64,000 nucleotides of DNA from Ascidiella aspersa (taxonomy: Eukaryota). The notes below the pieces were generated by a model. The model was not told the origin of the DNA. It saw only the letters and a program-made list of their open reading frames with translations, and ran no database searches. Location of the stretch: positions 36,642,001-36,706,000 of the forward strand of contig OZ004607.1 of assembly GCA_963924565.1 (NCBI GenBank). Reading direction: 5' to 3'. A program made the translations under genes and the position numbers. This document shows positions 2,352 through 58,305 of this stretch, piece by piece (the stretch's first letter is position 1; every line of letters begins with the position of its first letter).

Positions 2352-2683
2352 CAGGTATCCTTCAAGTAAGGTCCATGGAACCCTTGGGTGTAAGTGAACT
2401 AGTTTTAGGGGGTCCATGAAGGCTAAAGTGAAATATTTGTGTTATGTAAGAAGTTATCAATTTTTAAAGAAATGAGTTTAATTAAACATAAAACGGTTTT
2501 GCACTGAATATATTTAGACTCCATTTCACTTTTACACGTTTTGGACCAAAATCAGCAGATTTTTTAAGTGTATTGTTACGTAAATTTATAACGTTATCTC
2601 TGGAAATTTATCGCCTACCGTCGTCCACGCAAAGCAAAAAAAAAATTAGTGGTCCGCGGTAAAAAAAAGTTGAAGAACCGCTG
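2352..2683. mobile_element. hAT-type MITE (family B-related)
   Basis: cagg... and ...aagttgaagaaccgctg ends; flanks CTTTAAGG / CTTTTAAGG; ggggtccatg motifs. Confidence 0.7.
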
Positions 2684-18669: not shown

Positions 18670-18838
18670 NNNNNNNNNNNNNNNNNNNNNNNNNNNNNNN
18701 NNNNNNNNNNNNNNNNNNNNNNNNNNNNNNNNNNNNNNNNNNNNNNNNNNNNNNNNNNNNNNNNNNNNNNNNNNNNNNNNNNNNNNNNNNNNNNNNNNNN
18801 NNNNNNNNNNNNNNNNNNNNNNNNNNNNNNNNNNNNNN
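18670..18838. other. Assembly gap (169 N)
   Basis: N run. Confidence 1.
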
Positions 18839-38779: not shown

Positions 38780-40720
38780 TAATGACGTCATCAACATGTT
38801 ACGTCATACATGTAAAGACGTCTCATAAACCTCAAGTCAGAGGCAAACCAATAAATATTTGGAAACAAATCAAGTAAAGGTAAAATATCGCGCATTTATT
38901 TTGAAAATAATCTATTTTGAAATAAATATATTGTGATTTTTGTAACCGCACGTTATGGCATACATCCTTTGCGTGAACTCGCTGGAAAAGATTTTCCGAA
39001 TCCGTTTAACCGCGGTTCTCGAGACCAACGTGAAACGCGTCAGCATCCCACAATATCGCGCCCGGCCTGGATGACAAATTTACAGCGGAAGCGCGGAATG
39101 ACGAGCCTGTCCATGGGAAATGCGAAAACGTTGGTTTGACTCGAATCTTTGAACTTGCGAGCAAGTGCTTTTGGCAGTTTCGGCGATGCGAGTTTGGAAT
39201 GAACCGCATTTTTATGTTACCCTATCGTTCTATGTATGATATATTCAAAATTGGCGGAAAACCTACTCTCGTGTGGGGGTAAGGAAGTCAGTTACCAAAC
39301 GTGTCGAAAAAAATAACAAATATATATATATATATATATAGGAAGTCCTAGAATGGTCAGCCATCACAGAACCCGGTGTACTTTAGCCATGCATCAAGAT
39401 GTTTTAAAAACTATGGTTGCAACGCTAGCTCAAAGGCATCAGTTCCTTGTTGTTCATGTTCGCACTTCATTGCCTTACACGGAATTCACGGAGTCAATGA
39501 TAGGCGGTCGGGAGACAAGAAATCAATGCTTGTGCACTATGACGTCAATAACTTCGAGCGGGCGCCTGCAACGTTTCAGGTAGCTTGCACCATGTGCGGG
39601 CGAAGCTTGTGACGTCATAGCGACCGTTGTTGCGTCACGTTTAAGGGGGGTGAGAGTCAGAGTGCGATGGTGAAGGAAGGTTTTGAGTTTGCGAGGGAAG
39701 ATTCCCTATATAGTAAAAGAGACCTCTGAATGCGGGTTACAATTGATGTCCTATTTTTAATTTTAATGCGATGCTTCCTTGAGCGACCTTTACGATTTTT
39801 TCTAGAAAATTTCATATTTGTCAACATTGTTAGCCTATTCAACTTTGTCGTTTTTCAAATGGCTATGAATCCCATTAAAATGCGGAAATCACAGGCAACT
39901 CATTCTAAGCCTAGAAGATATCGAACGATTGTTAGTGTTTCCCGCGTTAAGCGTTTTCTTTATCTTTAAAAGACATTCCTATTAAGGCAAGGCAGTTTTA
40001 ATTGCCGGACATATCCTTTGCGTTTGCAACCTTTTGCAAAGTAATAGTTAAATCACCAAAAAAGTTTAAAATTCGCGGGCTTGGGAGATAATTTATTGAA
40101 AACCGCGACAAGCAATTAAAAAGCTTTTAGTGTTTGTGGTGTCATATATTTGTTTGCCGTGCAAATAAACTCGCCTTCAAAGGCGGAACTTAAGTTGACG
40201 CTGGGTCAACACATCAACGAAACATTCCCATGCTGTTTAACTTTAAATGACAAGAAGATTCCTTGTGGTTTGATTCTACAACTTAAAAACAATAGCAAAC
40301 TAAAAACAGAAAAATTATGTAAAAGTTTGAATTGTTTATAATTAAACTATAGAATTGAGTTGTTTTAGGTAAAATATAACTTCTTGCGTTTTTTGACCGT
40401 AAATCGCTTTTGTGATGAGTGCAAGTGGTGTTGATGAGTTTTTATTGTGAAAAAAGTTTTTTTTGTGTATTTTTAATGAAAATTAGTAACGTAATGTTTT
40501 AAAGACATGTATTTTATTCGAAATTTTATTGTTACGTTATTTGGCGTAATTTTTCCTCTCAAGTACAAGTACAGTTTTTCGCTTTAGAAGTGCTTCTCAC
40601 TGCCCATTGATTTATCGACTGTTACGTCACACCCGGTAGTTTTGACACACTATCGTGTCAAGTGGGCCCATTGACGCGCGAGCACCAACACGTGACTCAC
40701 GTCTCTATGACGTCAAAATC
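38780..40720. promoter_or_regulatory. Proximal CRE cluster upstream of SIK (candidate promoter/enhancer)
   Basis: TGACGTCA at 38783, 39540, 39610, 40708; TTACGTCA at 38799 and 40622; TGACTCA near 40693; TATA-like ctatatag near 39706. Confidence 0.5.
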
Positions 40721-41634: not shown

Positions 41635-41772
<138 letters not shown>

Positions 41773-44700
41773 TGACGTCACGCTTTGTTCTGTGGATTAG
41801 GAAAATTTGCGCTATTTCGGGCTTTAGGGATTGTCCGGAAATACAATGGAAGCAAGCTTTAAGGCGAGTCCGGACAAAATGCCCTTCTTCTTTATTAAAG
41901 GCGCGCCAATAGTTGTTAGATCTTGTTGGTACCCGAAAAAACACTATATTTAACTGTTTTTTGATCACTACAAACACTATATATAACGCTTTTTAAACGG
42001 CGTTTCGCGACCTTTATTCTATAACACGGTATGCGTTGATTTAATTATTTTTATTTTTGTGACAATATTTTATATTTTATTGCTATAGAGATGTATACGA
42101 TATATTCACATATTACTGTCAAGTGTCAATAGTACGCCTAAAACAAAGAACAAAGTACTCCTTTTAAATTTAAGAACCACTGCTGTGGAGGATTAATTTA
42201 TTTATATTACCAGCTTTCGAAATCGCGGGTATATGCGCAGGATAATTCCTAATGGCATATTGATCAAATCCAATCTAGCGATAAAGGCCCGGGGTCACCT
42301 TGCTCGAGATTTCCTTGACACGCCGGCGCTGAAACGCGATTAAGACGTCACACAGGGCTCGGTCAAATCCGTTTATTGCGAGCCTGTTGAACCCAGCTGG
42401 CCTTTTACGGAACTGTAATTCGTCACACAGAGCAGCCGCCTTAACCTTAACCGCATCTTTACGCCCTCTTTTAATTCTCACGCCCACTTAGAAACCCACG
42501 GCTTCCCCTATTCCAGCCTTATGTGGTGCTGTTGTATGTGTAACTGGACGTATTACCTTTAAAGGAACCAGCCTATTTTATTCATTCATATTCAGGTCAA
42601 GGCACATGGGCAAAATTAAGAACAATTGTGGCACACCTTGTAGCATTACATAAAAATCCAGTGCTTTTATAGCTTGGCAAATGCTATTACTACAATGCGA
42701 GGCAATAATACTACAATTATTATCAGTTGTCCAATGAAATATTGTACATTCACAGTCTACATGCTTTCAACCTTATTTTGGAATACGAATAGACCATATA
42801 AGCGTAGTATGTGTTTCCACAACATAATCTTGCCCTCCAACAAAACACATAATGCCGACGATAAAAGTTCTAAAATTTCTACAGCGGTACGCTTTTCAAG
42901 CTAACACGAATAGACCATTTTCCCAAATTTACAAAAATTACGCGAGAGAATCCCCAAATGTACATTTTCGAGAAATACAGATTGCGAACCACTGGTTCAA
43001 TGTAAATGCCCAGCTTTTTGGAGCGGCCATATAGTCACCTTGTGTACCCCGGCCAAACGATGACCCTCGCGACCGCCTGTTACCTAATAATGGTCCTCAA
43101 TTCGAAAATCGATTGTTGGCCCGCGTCGCGAGCGTGCAATTGTCCACGTCACAATGTGTCTCATTGTCTCAGCGCGTATCTAATTCACTATCCACAAAAC
43201 TAATTGTCACATATCTTGGCTAATTGCCATTCCCCGTATGTAAGTAAGTAACATGTTTTGCCAAACAACTTTAAAGGTTAAAATTTATCTCCGCGGCGCA
43301 TCGTTTCCTTATATGTTAACAATGTCGCTTGGCGGTGGCGTTACGATAATTTGCCTTGAGTTACGGGCGAACAACGAGTAAAGTCATCGGCGCCTGATCG
43401 TAGGCAAACACCAGCACGCCCATATTTGTCCCACGCGGTTTGTTTGATCGCTGTATCACGCAATCGGGAGTTGGCGAAGAGAGATAGACCGCATAACTAC
43501 TATCCGAAATGCACCAGGCACTATTTTCTAGCGATGCCTTTTAGCCGCTTTATAAAACCACTTAGCCAGCTGCAAAGCCGTTTTTTTCCTTTAAAAGGGG
43601 TTTAAAGAAGGCACCTTTTAAAAAGGCCTTTGTAAGCTGGGCCGTCGCGGTATCTCTTAAAGTTTCAACCAAGTTCCATTGGCGTCATGCCTTTGAAGAT
43701 AACGCCAGACACCGCCGTCCCTACGCCACGCGATTTTCGCCGGCAAATTATCGCTTCGCACTGTTGTTTTTTGAGATTTGGATGGAAAATATTCGAGGAA
43801 ATGTGATAAGGTTCGGCCGCCAGACGATACGCATATTTGGCGGTCGCACGACCTGTCGCCTGTACACTGTACAGCACAGCTTTATGCCCTTTATCGGTTT
43901 TGCTTGAGATAATATCGCCCATTTTGCGTTGGCCATGACCTAAAATGGAAACCGCCGTGGCTTAATCCAGGCCTCTTTAACTGTGAACTTGATTTCTTCG
44001 GGGTTAAGCTTTTTGCCTTGCTAATGGCGCTAAGTTTATTGTGGCAAGGTTAGAACTTATATACTTGTTTAAATAATTTATAACAAGCTGGGTTAGGTTA
44101 CAAGCCTATGATCAAATTACTGTTCTTTATTTCATTACCCTTTTTTCCATGTCAGTAAAACTGCCAATATACTAATAAAATGAACTTCAAATTTATATTT
44201 TAGGAGCTAAAATCGTAGTGGGGGAATTTTGCTACAAATAGACGCCTAGGGGCAAGCTCCAAAATAAGTAGTTGCGGTTAAGTTGTACCGCGTTTCAATT
44301 TCCCCGAATCGCTATTATTTTTGGACACTATTTTTGCTTTAAACTGTACTTTTATAACTTTACGTATGTTTGCTGTAGTTTTCATTTGTTAGAAATTATC
44401 TGCTGTATTACAGTGTGTTCCTAGATTTGCGCGATCCAAATAGTACTACAACTATCGTATGCCTACAAACTAGAATTATGGTGCGAAATACGCCATGCTT
44501 GTATTCAGTCACGCTCAATGTCACACTTCACTGGCGTTTTTTTACCTGGGCCCTAACTTTGACGCCGTAGGCACGTATATGGCATTTTTACCCTTTGCTT
44601 TGCGTTTTGCTTATTTTACCCCGACATATTGTTAATACGAGGGTAACACCTGCTTAGAGCTTTGACAAACAACAACTTTGCCAGACATTCGTCATTTTTC

Positions 44701-45228
44701 AGTAACAACTGCCTACTAAAAAGCGGAAAGTGTAACCCTTGGGTCACTGAATATTTTTGGAACATCTTACATTAAACGTTGCAATGCCACAATTTTGAAG
44801 CAGCCATCAAAACCCAGTGTTGTAAGGAAAAAACTATTTCGACAAAAACCTTCTTGTCTGTGACAAGAATCTTTTTGTTTGTCCAAGGAACAAAATGAAA
44901 AAAGTAAAACCCAACCAGTTTTAACCCCCCTTGCAACGCAAGTTTCCAGATTCCGTAAGCTAACCAAACCTTCACGTGTTTCGGCGATATGCTGCGTAGC
45001 TCGAGGCTACCGCTGCCCAGGCCTCAACCGTCTGCTGCTGCACTCTGTGACATCACAGGGCAAGAATCTCGTGCGCACAAGTGAGCCGCTCTGACGCACA
45101 TGGGCCCTTTGTGTGTCACTGTGCGTCTGATAAGCGTCGAGCGAGCGGCTGCGCCTCAGCCTGGGTTCGACAAGCAGCAGCCTATCGTGTGTTTCACTTG
45201 CTAACTGACGCTTTACGGTGTACAGAGG

Positions 45229-45292
45229 GGAGTCATTGGGTTTGCTGTTGTTCCGAGGTGGAAGGGGGTCATTGGGTTTGCTGTTGTTCTGC
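45229..45292. repeat. 36-bp tandem duplication
   Basis: gtcattgggtttgctgttgttc twice. Confidence 0.85.
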
Positions 45293-45714
45293 AACTCATT
45301 TGCTTTCTTCATGAAGTAATTTGAATCGTTTTTGTTTTTTGTTTTTTTTTTAAATTACGATTATTTCGAAATCAAATGAGTTAACGAATCAATGCAATTG
45401 AAACCTTGCCAAACTATATAAACGCTTGTGAAAAAATACAAGTACACTGTCCAGTGTGGAAACCTTGGGTTCAAAATGCCATTTTTTTTATCAAAAACAA
45501 ACAACAACCGTAGTTTAAAAGAATCAAAAAGCCTACAAGAATCAAAATCATAGTTTGCACAGAAACGGATACCGAAACGTTTTAAGCAAAAAAATGTTTT
45601 AAGCGTACAAAAATAAAAAAAAATTCAATACTACCAATAAAGTCCAAGTCGTCTCATTTAAAAACAGTGACTTGAATGCATTAAAGTAAGATCATTATTC
45701 CTAAGGGTCTAAGA

Positions 45715-46026
45715 CAGTGGTTCTTACCCTTTTTTCTTTCGTGGCCCATTTTCGTTGCACAAAAGTTCTGTGGCCCAATAAATGTTTATGAAAAAAAAAA
45801 CTATAAAATAGGTTTAGAACAAAACAGGTTTCAAAACAGATTATTTATTCAATCGTGCATTAGTGAGATACTTGCGCCTGAACAATAAATTTACATTCCT
45901 TCTCGATTCCTCCCCAATCCATTATTCTTGTAAAATTATGTATAGTGACACAAATGAAACTAAATTCCTCCATAAATCTAGCTTTTTTAATTGTTCTGTG
46001 GCCCACCAGTGAGCCATGGCCCGCTT
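45715..46026. mobile_element. Family E MITE (longer, inverted relative to 27537)
   Basis: Perfect TSD GTCTAAGA at 45707-45714 and 46027-46034; left TIR cagtggttctta; right TIR largely deleted. Confidence 0.8.
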
Positions 46027-46738
46027 GTCTAAGATGAATGAAGTTTCCAAGCAACTTCTTGCACCAGTTTGTTTTGCTCGCAATGATAAGCTCGAAGTTG
46101 TCCAGTGTTTAATTTGACGCGATCGCTCATAGCATCGTGACGTCTATTTACGACACACACCCGGGGTTGTTATGATTGCCGTTCCGCCCGATTGCTCGCA
46201 TTAGCGAGGAAAACTTGCCGGGCCCGAAGTTTTCACGTGACTCTCGTGTTGTGTTGTTTTTGTCGCGTCATAAACGCGCCTTTGTGACGCACCGCCGGCC
46301 GATTGTTCGCGGTCAGCCGGGCGTGACTGTTGACACCGGCCCAGATTTGCGTGATTTTTTGCTTGGTCGGTTGTTTTCCAGAGTGCATTGCGCTATATTT
46401 GATGGACATGCTTTAATATGTCAAAACAGGAATATTTTTCCTGAACATATAAAAGGGCGTATCCTTATGGAATTCAAAACTATTAGCAGCAGGTTTTTGC
46501 TTGTCGATCACTGTTCCGCTGACACGTATATAAACAAATGTACTGCGTTATTTAGCCACCGCGGAAGTCTATTTTGACAACTGCAAAACAAAATCAAAAC
46601 AATCTCAATAAGAAACCAATTTGCCCGAATGCAGTTAATTTTGGTGCCGATATTGTAAAAAGCAAAGATGCCGTTTCCTGTTGTTTTTAATTTTATCCTA
46701 GAACTTATTCCGACTGAAAGTTGTCAAATTTGCCCTGG

Positions 46739-47114
46739 TTTCAATTTATACCAAGGAAAGTTTCAAATTTTGTGTTTGTTTGTAATTTATTCCGACTGCA
46801 AGTTTTCAATTTTGTCCTTGTTTTCAATTTATACCAACTGCAAGTTTTCAATTTTGTCCTTGTTTTCAATTTATACCAACTGCAAGTTTTCAATTTTGTC
46901 CTTGTTTTCAATTTATACCAACTGCAAGTCTTCAATTTTGCCCTTGTTTTCAATTTATACCAACTGCAAGTTTTCAATTTTGTCCTTGTTTTCAATTTAT
47001 ACCAACTGCAAGTCTTCAATTTTGCCCTTGTTTTCAATTTATACCAACTGCAAGTTTTCAATTTTGTCCTTGTTTTCAATTTATACCAACTGCAAGTCTT
47101 CAATTTTGCCCTTG
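46739..47114. repeat. 42-bp minisatellite (7 clean units plus 2 degenerate units)
   Basis: Unit TTTTCAATTTATACCAACTGCAAGTYTTCAATTTTGYCCTTG from 46821 to 47114. Confidence 0.96.
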
Positions 47115-47144
47115 TGTTTGATATACTCATAACCCTCACTTTAA

Positions 47145-47330
<186 letters not shown>

Positions 47331-47875
47331 TAGTTATAGGTAGGCTGGTAGAATTTTGTAATTGTTTTTTCGAGAGCTGAAAAACAATATTTAAAAAGGT
47401 TGGCGCCGTTGAAATGTCGACCTTATTAGAGGAGTTTATTCTGCGTTAAAGCAAGGGCCACTAATTTTTATATATTGTAAAAAGTCTATTCACTGGTTTG
47501 TATAGTTATTAGTAGTCTGGCAGAATCTAATAAGTTTTTGAATATATTTTTTTTCACCAATTTATTTGGTTTTCTGGCTGATTCTTCGGCCGACATAGTC
47601 GCCAAGTCTCCAGCATTCTGCCATATGGTTATTGGAATATTCAGTAAAATTATTAAGTTTAAAGTTTGAGCGGCATAGATATGGTTACTTGAAAGCATCT
47701 GCGGGTTGGAATGAACTTTTCAGAAAAACAAAAAAATATAAATAGGTTAACTCGCAAACTAAGTGCATAAACCACAAAATATCATCATACTAAAGTCCAT
47801 CGATTTTCTATCGGAAGTTGCTCGGAACACTTTGCCCTTTCACCGAATGATTTTAACATTGCTGTGGTTTTCCAG

Positions 47876-47939
47876 GTGATGGAATCCAGCAGCGTGATTT
47901 ACCTTGTGTGCGAGTACGCAAGCCACGGTGAAGTGTTTG
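47876..47939 (+). CDS. SIK2: SIK coding exon 3 (hinge)
   Basis: VMESSSVIYLVCEYASHGEVF; ttccag / gtgagt. Confidence 0.96.
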
Positions 47940-48588
47940 GTGAGTATCTACTACCTACGTTCGTTGAGCTTATCCTCTTTTTGTTTGTCGTTTCTATGTG
48001 TTAAAGTGTGGGTGTTTTTTCGCGGACATTTTCGCGTATCTTCAACCTAACCGAAAAAAATTACCCTGAATATCACAAAAATAAACTAAATCTTTAAAAA
48101 ATGAATTCATACCAAAACCACAACGAAACATTGTATTGTAACGTTTAAAATAAGAAAGTGTTTTTTTTATAAAAGTTTAACGCGTTAATCACACAATCAT
48201 ACGACAATTTAAACTTATTTTGCTGTCTTTGGATTTAAAACTGCTGTCGTTGGTTTCCAAAGATACACATTGATGTAAAAATCATTCCCAAAATTAAAAC
48301 GGAAACCGGAAAATTCTCAAACCACTATCGCATTAGATTATCCTAAACGTTTAAAAACCAAGCAAACTATAGGCGGCCAGGCTTGAGGACATGTAGATTT
48401 TACTTGCATCATTATTAGTTAGTAAATTAAACTTCTACGATGTATACTTTTTTATGAAGCTTTAGACAAAAGAAAACCATAGCAAACCAAAAGGGAATAG
48501 CGGCAAAAAACAAGGTTTACCCCGAAAATAAATTTTCGGCACATATAATAACACGTGGCTCTTTAACGATTGTGCGTTTCCGTCCCAG

Positions 48589-48704
48589 ACTTTATCACAC
48601 AAGAGGAAAAGATACCTGAGGACAAAGCTCGTCGTATGTTCTACCAGGTGCTCACCGCCATCGAGTACTGCCACAAGAACAATGTCGTCCACAGGGACCT
48701 AAAG
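48589..48704 (+). CDS. SIK2: SIK coding exon 4 (catalytic loop)
   Basis: DFITQEEKIPEDKARRMFYQVLTAIEYCHKNNVVHRDLK; tcccag / gtaggc. Confidence 0.97.
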
Positions 48705-48962
48705 GTAGGCCAACTGTGACGTAGGCAACTCGCGTTGTGACGTAACAGTAGCGACGCGCGACCGTCCCACGAGAGCCGATCTTTGTGCGCTTTTGGTTTG
48801 TTCTATGTGGACGTTGGTTGTTAATGCGACTTGCGGTTATTGCGATAATGGTCTTTTGGCAGGTTTCGGCCGCGTTTCGTTAACATCGATTTTTATTGAG
48901 TTTCATTAACGTTGATTAAAAACGACAATTTTATTGAGTTTATTCGTTATTTTTTCTTCCAG

Positions 48963-49008
48963 GCAGAAAACCTTCTTCTGGACCAGAACGACAACATTAA
49001 GCTGGCAG
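48963..49008 (+). CDS. SIK2: SIK coding exon 5
   Basis: AENLLLDQNDNIKLA; ttccag / gtaggt. Confidence 0.96.
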
Positions 49009-49463
49009 GTAGGTTGTTGATTTTGTCAGGATTTTATGATAGTTAAGCCATGTTTTGTACAAGTTGGATTGCTTTACTGCCAACAGAGTTTCGCCTTTAG
49101 TTTCCTCTACTTTGGATATATTGGTTCCTTTTTAATGCGTGCAAGATAACAGGCGTTATTTATTTATTTGGTCTTTATAACTCTTAACCTAATATTCCCA
49201 CCCTTAAATCTTTAGCCACATTTTTATAAATATTTAAACGAGCTGTTCATAAAAGAATAAAAACGAGTCTGACCAAGAGTTTTACAAAAAAAGTAAGCCC
49301 ATACAAAAATTGGTAGCATTTTAAACGCCTAGAATGACTCTTTGTTCACTTTTTGTAAACGTTCAGAATGCTACCTACTGGTGTATATGGGCTTTGATTT
49401 TCTTGCTACGTCATTCTACAACCTCCAACCATTATGCTCCAGACTTTAACCGATTTTATGTAA

Positions 49464-49637
<174 letters not shown>

Positions 49638-49779
49638 TGAATTTTTTGTGTAACTAGAATCGAGTTTTAGGCGTTTGCCGAGTTCAATGGTCAAGGCGAC
49701 ACTACTTCATCTTTTTTAAATGGTGTATTGTTTTTACCAAAATGTTAAGGCAATAGAGAACCGGATAATTAAAAGTGAT

Positions 49780-49962
49780 ATTTATAACGGGAAAACGACC
49801 GTAAACTACCCATGGGCTATAATAGCATATTAGCTCTGTTTGTAAGGGTACTGCTATTAAAAAAACACAATTAAAGTGAAATGTTTAACGGGAAAACTAC
49901 TGGAAAACTACATATGGGCTTTAAATAGCATATGAGCAATGTTTGTAAGGTTACTGCTATTT
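49780..49962. repeat. ~100-bp diverged tandem duplication in intron 6
   Basis: taacgggaaaac...atgggct...aatagcatat...tgtttgtaagg.tactgctatt twice. Confidence 0.8.
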
Positions 49963-50277
49963 TTCAATGAAAAAACCCCAAAGCAGATGCAGTCAATCGT
50001 GCTCTGATTGTTTCTAACTTGCCAAGTTTACTTGGTATCTTAATGTCCTCACTATAACAGGGTCTATAAGTTCCAATAATTCCAAATGCTAGTTTTCTAT
50101 AGCATTGAATTGCTTTTACAGGATTTCCTAACAACAATTCTATTATTAGTGTTACTTAAGGGCTCTGGCGTCCGTTTCTTTTACCAGGGCAATTTCGTGA
50201 GGGCCTGGTCACAGTTATACACGGTCAAAGTGTTTCTATACACGTTACTGCGATGCAGGTTTTATCTTACTGAATAA

Positions 50278-50511
<234 letters not shown>

Positions 50512-51012
50512 TAAACAGCAGCAAACCTTTATTCCGTGTTTGCTGCGCAGCTTTTAGGGTAAGAAGTTTAAAAAGTGCGTATAGCTCAGCTTTCTGTCAA
50601 TTGACGCAAGGTTGATTACGCACGTAGGGGTTATCTATCTGGCTGGCTTTAGTCCAAACAGTCCACCTGACAGGTCAACCGTACGTTTAGGCGATTTGAA
50701 GAGGATGTCCTGCTTATAGTTACTTTAATAATGCAAAGATTTACTTGAGGAAATGGCTAGTTGCTTTAGGAATGCAAAGATAGGTTGAGGTTTCAGGTTT
50801 CATGAAAACATACAATCAAAGAACACGTCAATTGGCAGAAAGAACATAATTTCGTGGTCATCAGTAATCTCCCGTAAATATTTTATCTTTCCAGTGATTG
50901 AACCAAAAATTTAAATGCGTGGCGAAACTGTAGCAATCACGAAAGACACAAAGCCGTTCCAGCCTGATTTTTAACGACGTCCGACAATAAACACCCTCGA
51001 TTTTTGTTCCAG

Positions 51013-51113
51013 ACTGCGAGAACCTGATCCGTCGAATGCTGGTCGTTAACCCGAAGAAGCGACTTACAATCTCGCAGATCAAGAAGCATAAGTGGATGCA
51101 GGTGTTTGCCCAG
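51013..51113 (+). CDS. SIK2: SIK coding exon 8 (end of kinase domain)
   Basis: [34 protein letters not shown]; ttccag / gtaagc. Confidence 0.95.
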
Positions 51114-51165
51114 GTAAGCTACAAAACTGGATTTTTAATTAAGTGCGTTAATTAGGCCTGTAGTC

Positions 51166-51474
51166 CAGTTTTTCTCATCCTTTTATGGCTAGCGGCACCT
51201 CTGAGAGAAATAACAAATAGATTACAGCACCTCTATAAGATTTGTCCGTGGGTAATTTACTAGAATGTCACAATAAACGGACCTGGAACAACACACATCA
51301 ACTCTGAACAATGTAGGAAGTTATAATTGGATTCATTCCACTGTAATCTTACACAAAAAGTTGTAGGAGTCAACCAAAAATCAGATTCTTAAACATTTCC
51401 AAATATGTCGCGACACCCTTAAGGATTAGAAATGGCACCCTATGGTGCCGCGGCATCCTGGTTGAGAACCACAG
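51166..51474. mobile_element. hAT-type MITE (family A)
   Basis: cagtttttctcatcc / ggttgagaaccacag; flanks CTGTAGTC / CTGTATAG; similar to 4627-4906. Confidence 0.8.
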
Positions 51475-51862
51475 CTGTATAGGCTCTGTTGTTTTGCTGT
51501 TATAAGCAGGATTTCTAGGCAAGGGGTATCCGCCCTAACAATCTACTATGGTCAACTGACGATGTAAACAATTTCTACGTGCCGTTCCTTGTCAGCTGTT
51601 CGCTAATTGCGCTGTTTTTGCTCGTCATTTTTGCCGTAAGCCACTATACAAGCGTCCATCAGTTATACCTAACGAGGTCGCGAACGCGCTGTTTATGAAT
51701 GAGAGATTGCCAAGCCGGGTATTTTCGATCATTATTCAAGTCCCGTGCAGCGAAACAGCTGCTTTCGCAAACCAATTGACCAACGTGAAGATTGCCGCTC
51801 ATTATGTTAAACGCCAGGCCGCCTGCTGTATGTTGAACGTGTTGACACGCATGCCTTTAGTG

Positions 51863-52050
51863 CAGTTTTTCGCAACTTTTTTTGGCTTGCGGCAACCTAC
51901 AGAAATTATGAATATTTCGCGACACCCTTGCTCATTATTAAAACGCTTACTAGTAGGGCAAAAATTGGAATCCTGAAGAATGTGAAATATCTCTCGGCAC
52001 CCTTAAGCGGTAAAATGGCACCCTAGAGTGCCGCGGTACCCCGATTTAGA
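51863..52050. mobile_element. Internally deleted family A MITE
   Basis: Matches both ends of the 9231-9544 copy. Confidence 0.68.
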
Positions 52051-52234
52051 TTGTAATAGATGACTTGATATAGTTTAACAATAAGAGCAAAAACACATTT
52101 TGCGAAATAATTGTTTGTAGCATATTAAGGTTAAAACTGTAAGGGGTATGTGATGTCCGATACCCGATCATAAACCGTTTTTACCTTAGCTATACACTGA
52201 TAATAAAACAACAATTTGCTTTTGTGCCTCGCAG

Positions 52235-52357
52235 AAAAACGACGTCATCACGAAAGCCGACTCTCCGGCGCCACGTGTGGCCGGAATGCCCGAGTTTAAC
52301 GAGCACGTGTTAAAATGGATGCAGAGTCTCGGTCTAGACAGACTGGAAACGTTAGAG
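52235..52357 (+). CDS. SIK2: SIK coding exon 9 (UBA, first part)
   Basis: KNDVITKADSPAPRVAGMPEFNEHVLKWMQSLGLDRLETLE vs SIK2 [22 protein letters not shown]; tcgcag / gtaaag. Confidence 0.93.
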
Positions 52358-53119
52358 GTAAAGCATTTGCTGGTTTTAAAGTTAAGTCAGATACAATAAA
52401 GAGATTATAAAAAATATATATATATTTCGCCAACAAAGGCATTGTCAGCATATCTTGTATAAGTAGAATTGCTTTTTACATATCCTTTAAGATCTATTAA
52501 TTGTGTCTGACCTGAATTGCTAGCTGTGCTAGAGTATTTTGAACTGTTACTGATCAGGAATTAAAGTCGACATTTATCATGCAAGGGCCAAGGTGATTTC
52601 TATTATCACATATTTAGTGCAACATTAATTTAAACCGATATATCCTTTTACAACCCCGGTTTGGGCAAGGAAAAGGGTATTGAACAAGGATTTAATCGGA
52701 GATCTTGGTCTCTGCAGCCAAGTGTATTTAATATATGTAAATGCTTGACATCAACTTGTATATTTCGAACATTGGCTGTCTATACGGTTGTATAAGTGTT
52801 TGTTGAAAAATGCGCAGCTATAAGTGTGACAAAGTCACTAGATAGTTGAAGTTTAAAGTTCACCTTGGCACTTTTAAGATAAAAACGTTTAAAATTGATC
52901 CACACCATACCGGGTACCGCATTTCTGTTTTTCAATCGATCGCTTTCTGGTAATTGTAATTATTTATCAACATTTCGGCAACCTATTCAAATCGCCTTTG
53001 TCAGGGTGAATGACACTCAAATTACAAATTACATTTACCAGGGGAGCTGTTTTTTGATTTATATTACTATGCCTGGTAGCAACAGTTTATGTAAATCGAT
53101 CACTTTGTTGATTATTTAG

Positions 53120-53278
53120 TCTCTGCGGAATTCCTCGTACGACCACCTCTATGCTATCTACCACCTCCTAGTGGACAGATTAAAACAGCACCGAACCAGT
53201 TTTCCGCTGGAGGCGCGCATGTGCTTTGACGCGAGCCGAAGAAGACCTTCGAGCATCGCGGACCAAACGCTTACCAAG
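53120..53278 (+). CDS. SIK2: SIK coding exon 10 (UBA end; S343- and S358-equivalent sites)
   Basis: SLRNSSYDHLYAIYHLLVDRLKQHRTSFPLEARMCFDASRRRPSSIADQTLTK; atttag / gtaaaa. Confidence 0.95.
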
Positions 53279-53396
53279 GTAAAACGACTTTGGCTTTTAT
53301 TGGATGATGATCTGCTACTGTAGACCACTTCAACGTGAAGTTGCTTGTACTAACAGAATTTAGCCAGCATTGGCTTATGGTTGTTTCTCGACTCGC

Positions 53397-53472
53397 TCCT
53401 CTCTTAGCTCAGTTGGTAGAGCGACGGTCCCGGTATGACTGGAGGTCGTGAGTTCGAACCTCACTGCAGGAT
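53397..53472 (+). pseudogene. tRNA-like sequence (tRNA pseudogene or SINE head), nominal anticodon GGT
   Basis: A box TAGCTCAGTTGG, D stem GCTC/GAGC, stem CGGTC/GACTG around loop CCGGTAT, T arm GTGAG-TTCGAAC-CTCAC, TTTT at 53477-53480; acceptor stem imperfect and C at position 33. Confidence 0.75.
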
Positions 53473-53846
53473 ATTCTTTTGTCGTTGATTAGGAAGATTT
53501 CCTTATTCACATACTTTGTGTGTTCCCGTGAGAAACATGGAACCACAATCAAATACATTGGCAGTTTTAGACAAACAGCTGTAACCATCAGTAACTGATT
53601 GGCAATCGAAATTGATTTGAAACCACGATCAATATGCTCATTGCTCAGCAACAGATTTTCGCCCAATTGTAGTCGGTACAAAGCTACGAAACCAAAAAAA
53701 AGATACGAAACCAAACAAAAAGCTACGAAACACCGTTTAACGTCGGCCATATTTTACTGATTTATTTTGTAGTTACAATACGTTTTGCAGATAAATCGAT
53801 AACCGACTGACTTATTTGAAATTGAAACCTTTACCATTTTACTCAG

Positions 53847-54036
53847 GTACCCCTCATCACCCCCAGCGTTAGCCCCTTTCAGCCCGAAGTCGCCCACAAG
53901 CCCCAGTTCTTTCCAACCAAACGCAGCACGCTGCAGCACGCCTCACCTATGACGTCATTCGACGATGACGTCACGCCGGCCAAGCTGCTGCACGCGCAGG
54001 CGATCGAGCGGAACTTCGGCGATGATATTTGCCACG
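53847..54036 (+). CDS. SIK2: SIK coding exon 11
   Basis: VPLITPSVSPFQPEVAHKPQFFPTKRSTLQHASPMTSFDDDVTPAKLLHAQAIERNFGDDICH; actcag / gttcgt; GC-rich and phase-compatible. Confidence 0.8.
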
Positions 54037-54477
54037 GTTCGTACGGGACAGACTTTCTATTGGAATTTATCTAATAAGAAATTGTGGGGAGTGATAAACT
54101 TGATGTATCTCTGTTTGACTTTCTATTGGAATTTGTATATTTCTCTTTTTTGAACTTGTTTGGAGAATATACGGAATAATACGTCTAACACCTAATAATT
54201 TGGGTTTTGAAAACCCTGAAAAAATCTCTCAAAATTGTCCCAAACTTTATTATTCTAAAGTTATTTTTTAATATTTATTGATATTTAAGGATATAAATAT
54301 TTTTTATAGATCAGACTATATATATTCAGACAGAGTTGTTTAAAAAATTTTGAATGTTTCGCAATGTGATGGTTTCAAATGTGTGATGTTTATAGATCAA
54401 ACAATATGTATTCAGAGATGGAAACAACATATTTTTTAAATAAAAAGATACTAAATCCTCAATTTCTCCTCGTTCAG

Positions 54478-54773
54478 AAATCCCTCGCCTACAGCGCAGC
54501 CTGGCCATCGGGGGCGTCGGCGCCCAACAGCCCCCCGTGCACCACTCGCCCCCCAAACACCGCTACACGACCCAGGGGCCCGGCCCCAACCGGGGTCCTC
54601 TGCCCCACCAGCCCTGGTCCTTCCATTCGGGGGTTCGCATCTCGGCCTACCAACGAATAGCCAACCCCAGCTCGGTGCCTCGCTATGGGGAGGCGCGTGA
54701 CGTCATGCCGTCTGTGACGTCAATCGACGAGGGCGTCGAGCTTTCTGACATCACGGAAGAACAATCGGCGATG
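54478..54773 (+). CDS. SIK2: SIK coding exon 12 (TSIDEG motif)
   Basis: EIPRLQRSLAIGG...RDVMPSVTSIDEGVELSDITEEQSAM (SIK2 TSIDEGLE); gttcag / gtgagg. Confidence 0.88.
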
Positions 54774-55354
54774 GTGAGGGGATTTTTTGTGTGTGTTTAA
54801 AATCGAATGAAATCTTGTGTAAAAAAATAAAAAATGTACTGAAAAATGTGACACAAAAAAAAACAAAAAAAAATGTGTCGTCTAATGCTAAATAACTACA
54901 AGTACAATGAACCAGATATAAAAACTGCACTTAACACAGATTTTTCGTGTTTAAAATTGAACAAAATGTTGTGTAAATAATATAAAAAATGTCGCCTAAC
55001 GCTAAATAATTATAAGTATAACTGATATCGCTACAGCGATCTGGCGAAAGCAAACTAAGCTCGTACCGGGGTGACGTCATTTAAAATTGAACAAAATATT
55101 GTCCCTATAAAAACCCCTTCATACTGTAGTTGTACCCAGCCTGGTGACCATCTTTTCTGATAAAAAAACACAAGTACCCTATCGTTAAACACGCTTTTGT
55201 TATTTACAACCTTAATTGATTTGTCAATGCTTTTAAATTTATAAACATCAGCGAAATCAACTTTGCTGATGTGCGGTAACCTGTAAAAAAAACCATAACT
55301 GTCTTTTTAATATACTTTTTATGGCAATTTACTATGAAACTGATTTTTTTACAG

Positions 55355-55501
55355 ATGCGCCAGGCGTCGCAGCATCGACGTCACACGCTGGTCGTACCAG
55401 ACGTGACGTCATACCCCCCCAACCTCAACTTCCACGACCCCCAGACGCTAAACCGATCGACCGGCTTCGTCGGGATTACGGCCGATACCCATCACAACAC
55501 T
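55355..55501 (+). CDS. SIK2: SIK coding exon 13 (RRHTL, T484-equivalent)
   Basis: MRQASQHRRHTLVVPDVTSYPPNLNFHDPQTLNRSTGFVGITADTHHNT; ttacag / gtaagt. Confidence 0.9.
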
Positions 55502-55899
55502 GTAAGTTAGCAGTATATGGTCAGATTTAAATACAAAGACATGGCTCATATTAATTTAATTCTTATTAAAGCTAGTGTCTTATTTGTGAGATGTTCACTT
55601 TAAGCCTACGAAATGTTCACCAAAGAGAAACTGTGTAGTCAAAGCTTTGCTGTTGAACCTACGTCTAGTGTTTGGGTTGCCGCCAAAAAAGGTTGAGCAA
55701 CTCTGAATTAACCGTTAAACTTTTGAAAATGCGCTAATTAGGCAGTTTTCTTAAACAAACTTTAAGTTTTAAAGCTTCATACAGGCTACCCTGTATTTTC
55801 CGAGCCGACTTTAAACCGTTCGGGTGCTGGTTATCTGTATCCGCCAAATATTTTATGTAGACGCCAGGAATTTTTTATGCGTTGTGGACGCAGGATCGG

Positions 55900-56010
55900 G
55901 GCTACGAAGTGGGTTTAAAATAATCGAGTCCGACTCTCGAGTCTCGGGCCCGACTCCGGTCAAATGTGCGATTTCGTCGAGTCCCGAGTCCGGCCCTGAC
56001 TCTACAGCCT
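55900..56010. mobile_element. Family I MITE (GAGTCCGACTC repeats)
   Basis: gggctacgaagt...gagtccgactc...gactctacagcc. Confidence 0.6.
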
Positions 56011-56389
56011 TTATGGAATACTCTATTAGTTTTCAAAAATCTGTCACACTAAAAGTAGTGCAAATAAACATTGACATCTTAGTAGCTTTTTCACCTCTTT
56101 CTCAGGTTTAAGCGAACGTACAAACTGACTTTAAATCAATAAAATACTTTAAGAGTGCCTTCGACGGCGGCGATTCGAATTTTAAACAAAGCAATACAAT
56201 TCACACTTTCCCGGTAGTGTTTGCAGTTAGCGCTCAATCGACTGAAATATTGTTATTTGGCTTGCATGTGGGATACTCTATTAGTTTTCAAAATTCTTTC
56301 ACACTAAAAGTGGTGCGAATAAACACCTGTCTTAGTTAGAACTTCTCTTTTTAGGTCAAACTGACTTTAAATCAATAAACTACTTTCAG

Positions 56390-56633
56390 AGCGCTTTCGA
56401 CGCCGGAGACTCGCTTTCGAGCGCCTTCTCGGAACAAAGCGACGTCCTGGAAATGGACCTCCAAATACCCCCCATGCCCAACAACCCTGCCTATGACGTC
56501 ACCAACAACCGTGGCTATGACGTCACGCCCAAACTGGTACTTTCCCCGCCCGTCGACGCCGCGCACCCGATGGTGGATCCCCGAGTGACGCAGATCGAGA
56601 ACCAGCGACAGTTGCTGGACGTTTCTCCAACAG
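56390..56633 (+). CDS. SIK2: SIK coding exon 14
   Basis: SAFDAGDSLSSAFSEQSDVLEMDLQIPPMPNNPAYDVTNNRGYDVTPKLVL...LLDVSPT; tttcag / gtgaga. Confidence 0.85.
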
Positions 56634-56640
56634 GTGAGAG

Positions 56641-56945
56641 CAGTTATTCTCAACCTTTTATGGCTTACGGCACCCCTCAAAAATAATAAATAGGTTTTCG
56701 GCACCCCGAATGGATTTTTGTTATGGTATTTTACTGAAATGTCACTATAAATGGAACTGGAACAACACAATCAACTTGAACATGTAGAAAAATATTATTT
56801 GATGTACCGGTCTCTAATCGTACACAAATAGTTGTAAGAAGCTTACCAATTGAGCAAAAATCAGATTCTTAAAAATTCTTAAATACCTATCGAACCCTTG
56901 AGCATTACAAATCGCACACCAGGGGTTGCGGCACCTCGGTCGGTA
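56641..56945. mobile_element. Family A MITE starting 7 nt into intron 14
   Basis: cagttattctcaacctttt...; highly similar to the 24017 and 40879 copies; right TIR lost. Confidence 0.8.
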
Positions 56946-57099
56946 GTGCGTAGGTCTATATAGTTTGACGATCATTTGAAAAAACGCAGCATTGCACTTG
57001 GTTCTTTTGGTAAACGCCCAATCGTTAACTCTCACTATGTTCGAATCCCACAACCAGTGGTGACGTAAAACACTAACGCCCCTCCCCGTCCAATCACAG

Positions 57100-57284
57100 G
57101 CTTCCGTCAGGGCAGGAGGGCCAGCGACGGTCTGCTGTTGCTAGGCGACAACCGACTGGGGGAGCACCTCAAGTTGACCAGGGTCCAGGGATTCCCCACC
57201 ATCACCCAGGAGGAGACCGATGACGCCTGCCTGGAGACCAGTGACGTAGAGTCGGATTGCGTCAGCACGATGCCCTACCAACTG
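57100..57284 (+). CDS. SIK2: SIK coding exon 15 (RRASD, S587-equivalent)
   Basis: GFRQGRRASDGLLLLGDNRLGEHLKLTRVQGF...STMPYQL (SIK2 FREGRRASD); tcacag / gtgagt. Confidence 0.93.
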
Positions 57285-58144
57285 GTGAGTGACGTCATGA
57301 TTTGTTGTTGAGTTTAAATGTAGTGGGAGTTTTGTTATTAAATACTCGTTTAAGTAAATATTTATCGCGCGGTTGTGAGTCGTGACAATTTTGCAAAAAG
57401 GAAAACGTCAAGCAAACATAAAATCCAGCGCCGAACCTTTTGCCGCATATTTAGAATATAAAAAATCCCAATTTGTTTTTTTTAACACCGCATGCTTGTC
57501 TTTGTAATTGCCAGCTGCAGTTATTTTTTCTTTGCAACTCACGTTTTGCTTCTTTAATTCCATCTTACCGTTACACATCAATCCTGTCGGCAAAAAACCC
57601 TCAAACGAAACACATCGAACTTACCAACTGTTAAAAAAGCAACTAACTTGCAGAAGCTCTTAGCGTTAAGTCGAATAGGGGGATATGTGTTATAGCGTAA
57701 TATTTTGATGTATTGCTTTTGCACAATGTCTTCTTATTGGAAACAATTCATTTGGCTGATATTCTCTACCTGTTTGATACAATTTTATGCTTCCAAATCT
57801 TGTGTTAACGGAACACCAAATTTACAGCAGTTGGTTCGGTTGCTGTTGTATATGCTTCACTTTAGCCAATATTGTTCAGTTTTAAGTATTTCGAGCTAAC
57901 TCTGGGGTAACCGTTGGAAAGCCACTGTAACGATAAGTCATTTAACAAGTGTAGTCTACCGGGTATTTTGCGCAATTACTCTATCCAGGCGAGCATTGAA
58001 AGATGAAGACACTCGCGCCAAAGTTCGTGTAATTTAATAACCACTGACTCTTTAGTTTGCTTTGCTTTTTACCACTTGGTTAGGATGCTTATTGTCATTT
58101 AAAACAAGCTTTAATATTAATCTTATTTTTTTCATAATTTTTAG

Positions 58145-58305
58145 AATCATCTGGCAGCTCAAAAGACCACGCACAACGAACTGGGAATGATGTCATCGCA
58201 CTCGTCACACCACCTCACCAAGGGCGGTGACGTCATCAATTTCCAGCCCTACACTCCGACGAGCCGAAGGAAAAGCCTCCAAGTTTCCCAGGCGCTCGGC
58301 GAAAG
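58145..58305 (+). CDS. SIK2: SIK coding exon 16
   Basis: NHLAAQKTTHNELGMMSSHSSHHLTKGGDVINFQPYTPTSRRKSLQVSQALGE; ttttag / gtaaga. Confidence 0.83.

What the first reader, a model, noticed from the sequence alone, without database searches (positions are those of the whole stretch)
53847..58305. A DNA motif appears to dictate protein sequence: eight exonic CREs in both stop-free frames
Seen: exons 11-16 (~1.2 kb coding) hold TGACGTCA eight times, read as MTS (53950), DDVT (53966), RDVM (54698), VTS (54715, 55404), YDVT (56494, 56518) and GDVI (58228). Both possible frames are used; the third begins with TGA. Three close pairs are 16, 17 and 24 nt apart. The RRHT site is itself written CGA CGT CAC (CGACGTCA), and CpG-decay-type variants TGACATCA/TGATGTCA occur in exons 1, 12 and 16. 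Kinase exons 1-8 have no perfect copy. Inference: frame independence points to a nucleotide-level cause tolerated only in the disordered tail: dual-coding exonic bZIP sites, a chromatin or methylation signal, or a motif-generating mutational process. This is the best candidate for an undescribed system here.
Basis: partly seen in the sequence, partly recalled or inferred. Interest (0 to 1): 0.8.

Follow-up and report, generated by a model that had tools for sequence, protein, structure and literature searches.

The report
DNA palindrome written into kinase exons
Eight copies of the DNA word TGACGTCA sit in the coding exons of a sea-squirt kinase gene, far beyond what protein sequence or codon usage explains; they belong to a genome-wide excess of this word that bends codon choice and some amino acids, by a mechanism not yet known.

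Summary
All eight exonic TGACGTCA copies lie at the stated positions, in the two stop-free frames. Exon borders are supported by a Phallusia SIK2 protein and RNA-like contigs.

- **Not chance:** synonymous-codon permutation gives a mean of 0.65 copies (maximum 4 in 20,000), and codon usage predicts 0.32-0.49. Eight were observed.
- **Nearly saturated:** eight of ten peptide spots that could hold the word do. The tail has 10 such spots against 1.04 expected. The kinase and UBA exons analysed have none.
- **Not locus-specific:** the genome holds 45,059 copies against 5,750 of a composition control, and 73% extend to the 10-bp palindrome RTGACGTCAY. The excess also occurs in promoter-like DNA, introns and transposon families.
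- **Already seen by this scan:** the same phenomenon was noted on other DNA of this genome. I found no published description.
- **In relatives:** Phallusia SIK2 carries the same peptide imprint at partly different positions. A more distant ascidian keeps the perfect word at two of the eight positions.

Best model (about 0.5): double-stranded recognition by a dimeric ATF/CREB-type bZIP, with sites kept wherever protein constraint is low. A drive-like process or an RNA role is not excluded.

The parts
53847..54036 (+). Exon 11 of the SIK-like kinase gene (disordered tail). It holds two copies, at 53950 (ATG ACG TCA, MTS) and 53966 (GAT GAC GTC ACG, DDVT), 16 nt apart.
   Evidence: tblastn of Phallusia SIK2 matches 53856-54029
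54478..54773 (+). Exon 12. It holds copies at 54698 (CGT GAC GTC ATG, RDVM) and 54715 (GTG ACG TCA, VTS of the conserved VTSIDEG), 17 nt apart. The one-letter variant TGACATCA lies at 54746 (SDIT).
   Evidence: representative search with this exon found Phallusia SIK2
55355..55501 (+). Exon 13. It holds one copy at 55404 (GTG ACG TCA, VTS in PDVTS). The 7-of-8 match CGACGTCA at 55376-55383 encodes the RRHT site.
56390..56633 (+). Exon 14. It holds copies at 56494 and 56518 (TAT GAC GTC ACC and TAT GAC GTC ACG, YDVT twice), 24 nt apart.
   Evidence: X3 contig of 299 nt covers 56390-56628 with 30 unlike letters at each end, as expected of a spliced transcript
56478..56526 (+). 24-bp tandem duplication (2.0 copies, 92% match, eight codons NNxxYDVT). 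It created the second YDVT copy.
   Evidence: Tandem Repeats Finder; Phallusia and L031 have a single xDVT here
57100..57284 (+). Exon 15 (RRASDG site). It holds no perfect copy. The best possible partial match, TGACGTAG at 57242-57249 (SDVE), is present.
58145..58305 (+). Exon 16. It holds one copy at 58228 (GGT GAC GTC ATC, GDVI). The variant TGATGTCA lies at 58188.
55072..55079 (.). Intronic copy in intron 12, next to a locally repeated AT-rich segment.
57290..57297 (.). Intronic copy starting at the sixth intron base after exon 15 (CTG|GTGAGTGACGTCA), overlapping the last letter of the GTGAGT donor. Genome-wide this arrangement is no more frequent than chance.
41773..41780 (.). Intronic copy starting at the fourth intron base after exon 1 (GAG|GTATGACGTCA).
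38783..40715 (.). Four copies (38783, 39540, 39610, 40708) lying 0.9-2.9 kb upstream of the start codon at 41644. This is a promoter-like cluster with neighbouring ACGTCA half-sites and CACGTGAC.
   Evidence: no coding frame
41644..53278 (+). Kinase and UBA exons 1-10 of the same gene. They hold no perfect copy. In the 1,053 nt analysed there is no peptide spot where the word could fit.

Best explanation
The eight exonic copies are a local case of a genome-wide property of this phlebobranch ascidian. The 10-bp palindrome RTGACGTCAY, a perfect CRE/ATF site, is kept in very large numbers in unique GC-rich DNA (exons and promoter-like regions). It is also carried by transposon families.

The most likely mechanism is recognition of the double-stranded site by a dimeric bZIP protein of the ATF/CREB class. 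A weak but pervasive pressure then keeps perfect sites wherever the protein can afford them.

In coding DNA the word is accommodated in two ways:
- By synonymous choice, including otherwise rare T-ending codons.
- In the unconstrained SIK tail, by amino-acid replacement (for example L to M before TS, N/G to D in RDVM) and by a 24-bp duplication.

The kinase and UBA domains stay free of the word because their sequence offers no compatible peptide.

Shown here: the excess, its nucleotide-level nature, the symmetric 10-bp consensus, the near-saturation of available spots, the peptide imprint, and its partial sharing with relatives. Inferred: that a bZIP binds the sites, that the pressure is selection, and what the exonic sites do (intragenic enhancer or chromatin function).
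For: - **Codon level:** 8 observed against 0.65 by synonymous permutation (maximum 4 in 20,000) and 0.32-0.49 from codon usage. Eight of 10 compatible spots are filled, and one empty spot overlaps a filled one.
- **Protein level:** the tail has 10 compatible peptides against 1.04 after residue shuffling (none of 20,000 shuffles reached 10). DV occurs 9 times against 1.9 expected, while VD occurs 2 times. The folded part has none.
- **Genome level:** 45,059 copies against 5,750 for the reversed control. A 300-kb random sample holds 48 copies. Of 106 GACGTC hexamers, 70 carry T..A flanks, and the excess over a first-order Markov model is 10x to 49x in every GC class.
- **Symmetry:** R at -1 and Y at +1 hold in both GC-rich and AT-rich sites. 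Genome-wide, 32,742 of 45,059 copies (73%) fit RTGACGTCAY, against 21% for the control word. All eight SIK sites have R at -1 and seven have Y at +1.
- **Sharpness:** one-letter neighbours are not enriched overall (168 against 154 for controls), except TTACGTCA/TGACGTAA and CpG-transition variants.
- **Non-coding sites:** those in the window lie in promoter-like clusters beside TGACTCA and CACGTGAC.
- **bZIP genes:** present and not expanded.
- **Relatives:** the Phallusia SIK2 tail has 10 compatible peptides against 1.12 expected, with positional turnover. Another ascidian contig keeps the perfect word at 2 of the 8 positions and 7-of-8 matches at three.
Against: - No binding, accessibility or expression data could be examined.
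- Functional CREs are normally promoter-proximal, whereas these lie 12-17 kb inside the gene.
- Near-saturation of every available coding spot, and tens of thousands of perfect sites with little enrichment of weaker variants, are unlike ordinary transcription-factor site evolution. They fit a drive at least as well.
- The excess is strongest in GC-rich, exon-like DNA (about 49x against 10-15x), which an RNA-level role would also predict.
- Part of the genome-wide count is repeat-borne, so 45,059 overstates the number of independent sites.
Confidence: 0.5

Rival explanations
1. A molecular drive rather than selection. A lineage-specific bias in repair or gene conversion favours alleles carrying the perfect palindrome in GC-rich, recombining or transcribed DNA. 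One possible form is a protein bound to the site that shields it from breaks, so the unbound allele is converted. The word then accumulates until protein constraint stops it. This would be the eukaryotic counterpart of uptake-sequence accumulation in bacteria.
For: - Available spots are nearly saturated (8 of 10).
- The preference for the perfect word over its one-letter neighbours is very sharp.
- Intensity is lineage-specific: a distant relative fills about 2 of 7 spots at the same gene.
- Positions turn over while the number stays constant between this genome and Phallusia.
- Amino-acid changes occur at poorly conserved positions, as described for bacterial uptake sequences (PMC2817400).
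Against: - Copies of a transposon family that carries two sites decay to TTACGTCA, TGACGTAA, TAACGTCA and TGATGTCA (7 of 13 site instances lost). There is therefore no universal correcting process.
- The density is highest where constraint is highest.
- No known animal mechanism does this.
Confidence: 0.2
2. An RNA-level element. UGACGUCA in the transcript would act as an exonic splicing enhancer, as a binding site for an RNA-binding protein, or, when paired, as an 8-bp hairpin stem.
For: - The excess is strongest in exon-like DNA.
- The exons lie in AT-rich introns, where exon definition matters.
- Two of the three close pairs fold into hairpins with z about -3.
- 5,094 close pairs occur genome-wide against 19 for the control.
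Against: - The same 10-bp symmetric consensus holds in AT-rich, transposon-borne and promoter-like sites.
- There is no excess next to 5' splice sites: GTRAG+TGACGTCA occurs 159 times against about 176 expected.
- The SIK sites lie 50-238 nt from exon ends.
- Flanks of paired copies do not extend the stem, and one pair does not form the hairpin.
- The word does not resemble the purine-rich enhancers known from other animals (own knowledge).
Confidence: 0.12
3. A locus-specific reading. The copies would be CREB sites of a SIK-CRTC-CREB feedback loop, since SIK kinases restrain CREB co-activators and mammalian SIK1 is a CREB target (own knowledge). Exonic sites would serve as an intragenic enhancer of this gene.
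For: - Fifteen of the 22 window copies lie in the 20 kb of this gene. Four are upstream and one lies just inside intron 1, three bases after exon 1.
- The peptide imprint is shared with Phallusia SIK2.
Against: - The same packing is reported for unrelated genes of this genome (NAV, FLRT, ABCC, a zinc-finger gene).
- It is also seen in open frames of random genome samples.
- The local density follows from the number of compatible peptides multiplied by a genome-wide fill rate.
Confidence: 0.1
4. Peptide-level selection. DVT/DVI and M/V-TS would be short linear motifs of the SIK tail, and the DNA word would be a by-product.
For: Several of the peptides (VTSIDEG, PDVTS, xDVTPK, xDVIN) are conserved among ascidians.
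Against: - Two different frames give unrelated peptides.
- Codon choice, including the third base of the preceding codon, completes the word in 8 of 10 cases.
- Conserved peptides use other codons in the distant relative.
- The same word is in excess in non-coding DNA.
Confidence: 0.03

Closest known systems
cAMP response element / ATF site bound by bZIP dimers (CREB, ATF1, ATF2/7, CREM)
   Same: - It is the identical 8-bp palindrome.
- It has symmetric purine/pyrimidine flanks as expected for a dimer.
- It clusters with half-sites and with AP-1-like and CACGTG-like words in promoter-like DNA.
- bZIP genes are present in the genome.
   Different: - Known functional CREs are few per gene and promoter-proximal.
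- Here there are tens of thousands of perfect copies, many inside coding exons, filling most spots where the code allows them.
- Occupancy was not tested.
Dual-use codons and exonic enhancers (duons, eExons; PMC4745165, PMC8410138)
   Same: A transcription-factor word lies inside coding sequence and biases codon choice.
   Different: - In vertebrates the effect is subtle, statistical and spread over many factors.
- Here a single exact word gives a roughly 12- to 25-fold excess in one gene tail and visibly changes amino acids.
DNA uptake signal sequences in Haemophilus and Neisseria proteomes (PMC2817400)
   Same: - An exact short word is present in thousands of copies.
- It lies in coding regions in several frames.
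- It raises the frequency of the peptides it encodes.
- It sits preferentially at poorly conserved positions.
   Different: - Those are bacterial and non-palindromic.
- Those accumulate through biased DNA uptake plus recombination, a machinery animals lack.
- Here the word is a palindrome with a known eukaryotic reader family, and the accumulating force is unknown.
M26/CRE recombination hotspot of fission yeast (Atf1-Pcr1; own knowledge)
   Same: It has the same core (ATGACGT, extended to TGACGTCA) read by a bZIP dimer, with an effect on chromosome behaviour rather than on transcription only.
   Different: A hotspot word is expected to be lost by conversion, not to accumulate. No recombination data exist here.

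Membership tests
CRE/ATF bZIP binding site | Exact palindromic core TGACGTCA | tested here: met
   22 copies in the window, 8 of them in tail exons.
CRE/ATF bZIP binding site | Two-fold symmetric flanks, as for a dimer on double-stranded DNA | tested here: met
   R at -1 in 57 of 70 sites and Y at +1 in 58 of 70. The rule holds in both GC-rich and AT-rich sites. Genome-wide, 73% of copies fit RTGACGTCAY, against 21% for the control word.
CRE/ATF bZIP binding site | Graded tolerance of half-site variants | tested here: inconclusive
   TTACGTCA/TGACGTAA are about 3x enriched and other neighbours are not. However, decaying transposon copies produce the same variants.
CRE/ATF bZIP binding site | Promoter-proximal position | tested here: not met
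   The eight exonic copies lie 12-17 kb downstream of exon 1. Only the four upstream copies fit.
CRE/ATF bZIP binding site | Occupancy by a bZIP protein in vivo | not testable with these tools
   bZIP_1 domains are encoded in the genome, about 12 matches. No binding data are available.
Dual-use codons / exonic enhancer | Codon choice biased towards the word beyond codon usage | tested here: met
   Permutation mean 0.65 and codon-usage expectation 0.32-0.49, against 8 observed. All 5 preceding codons end in T.
Dual-use codons / exonic enhancer | Enhancer activity or footprint of the exon | not testable with these tools
   This needs reporter assays or footprinting.
Exonic splicing enhancer / RNA element | Bias towards splice sites and restriction to transcribed exons | tested here: not met
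   The donor-adjacent arrangement occurs at chance level (159 against about 176). Sites lie 50-238 nt from exon ends. The same consensus holds in transposons and promoter-like DNA.
Drive-accumulated genomic words (uptake-sequence type) | Thousands of exact copies, in several frames, raising the encoded peptides at weakly conserved positions | tested here: met
   DV occurs 9 times against 1.9 expected. RDVM and one YDVT are derived. The folded domains are untouched.
Drive-accumulated genomic words (uptake-sequence type) | A transmission or repair bias in favour of the word | not testable with these tools
   This needs pedigree or population data. Decay in transposon copies argues against a universal bias.
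SIK (salt-inducible kinase) gene | AMPK-related kinase domain, UBA region and RRHT/RRAS sites, collinear with a named SIK | tested here: met
   tblastn of Phallusia mammillata SIK2 gives 84-100% identity in kinase exons and is collinear to exon 19.

The most novel reading that the evidence does not exclude
In ascidiid sea squirts, a protein-directed drive (biased repair or conversion at a bZIP-bound palindrome) writes perfect RTGACGTCAY sites into GC-rich genic DNA. It steadily remodels the disordered regions of proteins. This would be a eukaryotic analogue of bacterial uptake-sequence accumulation and a new way for a DNA word to shape a proteome.
Probability: 0.2. Interest if true: 0.9.

Novelty: new variant of a known kind. 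Interest (0 to 1): 0.72.

Why it matters
If a single transcription-factor word can saturate the coding exons of an animal, then nucleotide-level forces can dictate codon choice and even residues far more strongly than the disputed "duon" effects seen in vertebrates.

- It offers a clean natural system to measure selection or drive on dual-use sequence. The word is exact, the available spots can be counted, and related ascidians differ in intensity. Ciona and Phallusia embryos are standard electroporation systems for testing regulatory DNA (own knowledge).
- It is a practical warning for annotators. DV[TIM] and [MV]TS peptides in disordered regions of these species may be by-products of DNA, not protein motifs.

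Tried and rejected
**Ideas tested and dropped**
- **Link to 5' splice sites.** Two intronic copies start three and five bases after a donor GT. Genome-wide, GTRAG+TGACGTCA occurs 159 times against about 176 expected, so this is rejected.
- **Transposon-excision footprints as the source of close pairs.** The spacers between paired copies share no termini, so this is rejected. One pair is a plain 24-bp tandem duplication.
- **RNA hairpins between pairs.** These are possible for two of three pairs. Flanks do not extend the stems, and the third pair does not form a hairpin.
- **Methylation signal.** CpG is not depleted in the window or in most samples. This was not directly testable.
- **Chaetognath origin** (nine chromosomes, no gene-body methylation). 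This was dropped once the nearest protein proved to be Phallusia SIK2.

**Searches that returned nothing useful**
- Six literature searches for a description of the word in ascidian or any coding exons found nothing relevant (paper look-up).

I stopped that form and recomputed from coordinates only.
Exon 12 alone was searched. Exons were joined only inside local counting scripts.
- X4, listed under a different organism label, is near-identical at low depth and gave no cross-species information.


Full report
**What is there**

TGACGTCA occurs 22 times in the 64-kb window, against 0.76 expected from dinucleotide-preserving shuffles. After homopolymer runs it is the most over-represented 8-mer. 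Ten copies lie in 53847-58305.

The + strand carries a SIK-type kinase gene. Exon 1 starts at 41644, kinase and UBA exons run to 53278, and a long tail follows. My splice reading of tail exons 11-16 is 53847-54036, 54478-54773, 55355-55501, 56390-56633, 57100-57284 and 58145-58305. Two lines of evidence support it:
- tblastn of Phallusia mammillata SIK2 (P0001) matches exon by exon, with its sequence running on across my junctions.
- Run X3 has contig depth of about 55-115 over the bins that hold exons and about 2-30 over bins that are wholly intronic. One 299-nt contig covers exon 14 with 30 unlike letters at each end, as a spliced transcript would.

Run X1 is the assembly source. X2 is another individual. 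X4 is the same or a near-identical organism at low depth. The sites are therefore not an assembly artefact.

Only exon 12 was searched, and exons were joined only inside local counting scripts.

**Is it more than chance and more than the protein?**

- Permuting synonymous codons within the tail gives a mean of 0.65 copies. No permutation out of 20,000 exceeded 4, against 8 observed.
- Given the tail protein, codon usage of the folded part predicts 0.32 copies. Whole-gene usage predicts 0.49.
- Ten peptide spots can hold the word. They are either x-D-V followed by a residue whose codon starts with A, or L/M/V-T-S. Eight are filled. One of the two empty spots (PDVT) overlaps the filled VTS. Only LDVS is truly unused.
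- All five codons in front of GAC GTC A end in T (GAT, CGT, TAT, TAT, GGT), although T-ending codons are 11.5% of the tail.
- The protein itself is imprinted. The tail has 10 compatible spots against 1.04 after residue shuffling, and none of 20,000 shuffles reached 10. DV occurs 9 times against 1.9 expected, while VD occurs twice.
- The 1,053 nt of kinase and UBA exons analysed contain no compatible spot at all. That explains why they hold no copy.

**It is genome-wide**

The window is G000:C1:36642001-36706000 of a 308.6-Mb genome with nine chromosomes of 26.6-41 Mb. The nearest named protein is from the ascidian Phallusia mammillata. Ascidia mentula also has nine chromosomal pseudomolecules. 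I infer a phlebobranch ascidian of that group.

- The genome holds 45,059 copies, against 5,750 of the reversed control word.
- Thirty random 10-kb samples hold 48 copies.
- In sample plus window (364 kb), 70 of 106 GACGTC hexamers carry the T..A flanks.
- The excess over a first-order Markov model is about 10x below 35% GC, about 15x at 35-54% GC and about 49x at 55% GC or more.
- The 12 other window copies are not in convincing coding frames. Several lie in promoter-like clusters next to TGACTCA, CACGTGAC and ACGTCA half-sites, including four copies 0.9-2.9 kb upstream of SIK exon 1.
- About half of the AT-rich sample sites are in repeats. One family has two sites 13 bp apart in its consensus. 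Its copies decay to TTACGTCA, TGACGTAA, TAACGTCA and TGATGTCA. The total count is therefore inflated by repeats.
- That decay also explains most of the few enriched one-letter neighbours. Overall the neighbours are not enriched (168 against 154 for controls).
- Earlier notes of this scan describe the same packing in NAV, FLRT, ABCC, a zinc-finger gene and others of this genome.

**What reads it**

The flanks are symmetric. R at -1 occurs in 57 of 70 sites and Y at +1 in 58 of 70. The rule holds in both GC-rich (26 of 34 each) and AT-rich sites (30 and 29 of 33). Genome-wide, 32,742 of 45,059 copies (73%) fit RTGACGTCAY, against 21% for the control word.

All eight SIK sites have R at -1, and seven have Y at +1. 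This explains residue choices. M or V rather than L precedes TS, where the relatives have LTS. T, I or M follows DV.

A two-fold symmetric 10-bp site found alike in exons, promoter-like DNA and transposons points to a dimeric reader of double-stranded DNA. By established knowledge, the ATF/CREB class of bZIP proteins reads exactly this word. About twelve bZIP domains are encoded, with no expansion.

Close pairs are common: 5,094 with a gap of 0-30 nt, against 19 for the control. Spacings run from 11 to 37 nt, with modes near 13-15, 22 and 24-26. Repeat families contribute to these figures, so I do not read helical phasing into them. Solo half-sites are 4.6 times denser within 60 bp of full sites.

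**Relatives**

The Phallusia SIK2 tail has 10 compatible peptides against 1.12 expected (none of 10,000 shuffles reached 10). Its folded part has none.

Positions turn over between the two species:

| Status | Peptide spots |
|---|---|
| Shared with Phallusia | L/MTS, VTS-IDEG, PDVTS, xDVT-PK, xDVIN |
| Only in this genome | RDVM, the extra YDVT, DDVT (Phallusia has DDVV) |
| Only in Phallusia | PDVTH, SDVTE, YVTS, SDVTD |

A JGI metagenome contig (L031) carries the SIK gene of a more distant ascidian. It has 4 copies in 20 kb against 1 for the control, and a CpG observed/expected ratio of 1.17. At the positions of our eight sites it shows:

| Our site | L031 sequence | State |
|---|---|---|
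| DDVT (53966) | GAT GAC GTC ATA | perfect word kept |
| Second YDVT (56518) | AAT GAC GTC ACG | perfect word kept |
| MTS (53950) | CTGACGTCG | 7 of 8 |
| VTS (54715) | GTGACATCA | 7 of 8 |
| VTS (55404) | TGAGGTCA | 7 of 8 |
| RDVM (54698) | - | nothing comparable |
| First YDVT (56494) | - | nothing comparable |
| GDVI (58228) | - | nothing comparable |

So some peptides pre-existed and the word was written into them by synonymous change. Others were created by replacement. The YDVT pair arose by a 24-bp tandem duplication (Tandem Repeats Finder, 56478-56526).

**Mechanism**

Shown here:
- a nucleotide-level force;
- a symmetric 10-bp target;
- near-saturation of permitted coding spots;
- an imprint on disordered protein sequence;
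- presence in relatives at different intensity;
- decay in transposon copies.

Inferred: a bZIP dimer binds these sites. A weak pervasive pressure, plausible in species with very large populations, keeps them wherever constraint is low. Exonic sites would act as intragenic regulatory or chromatin elements. I put this at about 0.5.

The rivals are:
- **A drive-like bias in repair or conversion (0.2).** It explains the saturation, the sharpness and the lineage specificity better. It is at odds with the decay in transposons.
- **An RNA role (0.12).** The exon bias fits. The symmetric consensus in non-exonic DNA does not. Nor does the chance-level frequency next to donors (159 against about 176), nor the inconsistent hairpins.
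- **A SIK-specific CREB feedback enhancer (0.1).** It may add to, but cannot explain, a genome-wide pattern.
- **Peptide-level selection (0.03).**

**Comparison with what is known**

The word is a textbook CRE/ATF site, but its number, its exonic location and its saturation are not textbook. The concept of dual-use codons and exonic enhancers exists (PMC4745165; review PMC8410138), with far weaker effects.

The closest analogue in behaviour is the accumulation of DNA uptake sequences in bacterial coding regions. Those raise the frequency of the encoded peptides and sit at poorly conserved positions (PMC2817400). The mechanism there cannot apply to an animal.

Six literature searches found no description of this phenomenon in ascidians or elsewhere (paper look-up).

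**Limits**

- There is no annotation, no binding data and no population data.
- The 169-N gap at 18670 was left alone.

Noticed in passing
window 56478-56526: A 24-bp tandem duplication of eight codons (NNxxYDVT, 92% match) inside exon 14. It is absent from Phallusia SIK2 and from the L031 relative, and it doubles the TGACGTCA copy.
   Followed up: yes
window 2504-2662; L008:1019-1187; L017:9067-9233; L015:3458-3624; L030:8555-8720; L006:3629-3790; L005:9202-9360: A short interspersed repeat family whose consensus carries two CRE palindromes 13 bp apart. Individual copies show them decayed (the window copy reads TTACGTAA and TAACGTTA).
   Followed up: partly
window 53229-53586, 55914-56092, 56630-56987: SIK introns hold very high-copy repeats (summed contig word depth 10^4-10^5 in runs X1 and X2), with many internal deletions and joints among copies.
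   Followed up: no
window 56010-56175 versus 56265-56415: Intron 13 contains a roughly 250-bp duplicate of the region just upstream of exon 14, including a look-alike of the acceptor and of the first ~25 nt of exon 14 (with aag instead of cag). It may be a dead or alternative exon start.
   Followed up: no
G000:C2:20080392-20081753: An uninterrupted 985-aa open frame with a complete C5 DNA-methylase domain (E 3e-50). That is unusual for an intron-rich animal gene.
   Followed up: no
window 16403-16440, 33676-33715, 40680-40715: Non-coding TGACGTCA copies sit in promoter-like clusters with TGACTCA (AP-1-like), CACGTGAC and several ACGTCA/GCGTCA half-sites.
   Followed up: partly
L007, L013, L028 (genome samples): A few 10-kb samples are strongly CpG-depleted (observed/expected 0.36-0.60) while most of the genome is at 1.0-1.3. 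These samples hold no TGACGTCA. This suggests a mosaic of methylated and unmethylated DNA.
   Followed up: no
G000:C1:71092-71869; C3:38.77-38.82 Mb; C4:132634-132832; C1:2978832-2978975: Tandem arrays with periods of about 70, 19-38, 31 and 34 bp, whose unit contains TGACGTCA. They add to the genome-wide count and to the count of close pairs.
   Followed up: no
P0001 (Phallusia mammillata SIK2), residues 286-684: The orthologous tail has 8 DV against 1 VD, and 10 word-compatible peptides against 1.12 expected. This predicts that the Phallusia genome shows the same DNA-word excess.
   Followed up: partly
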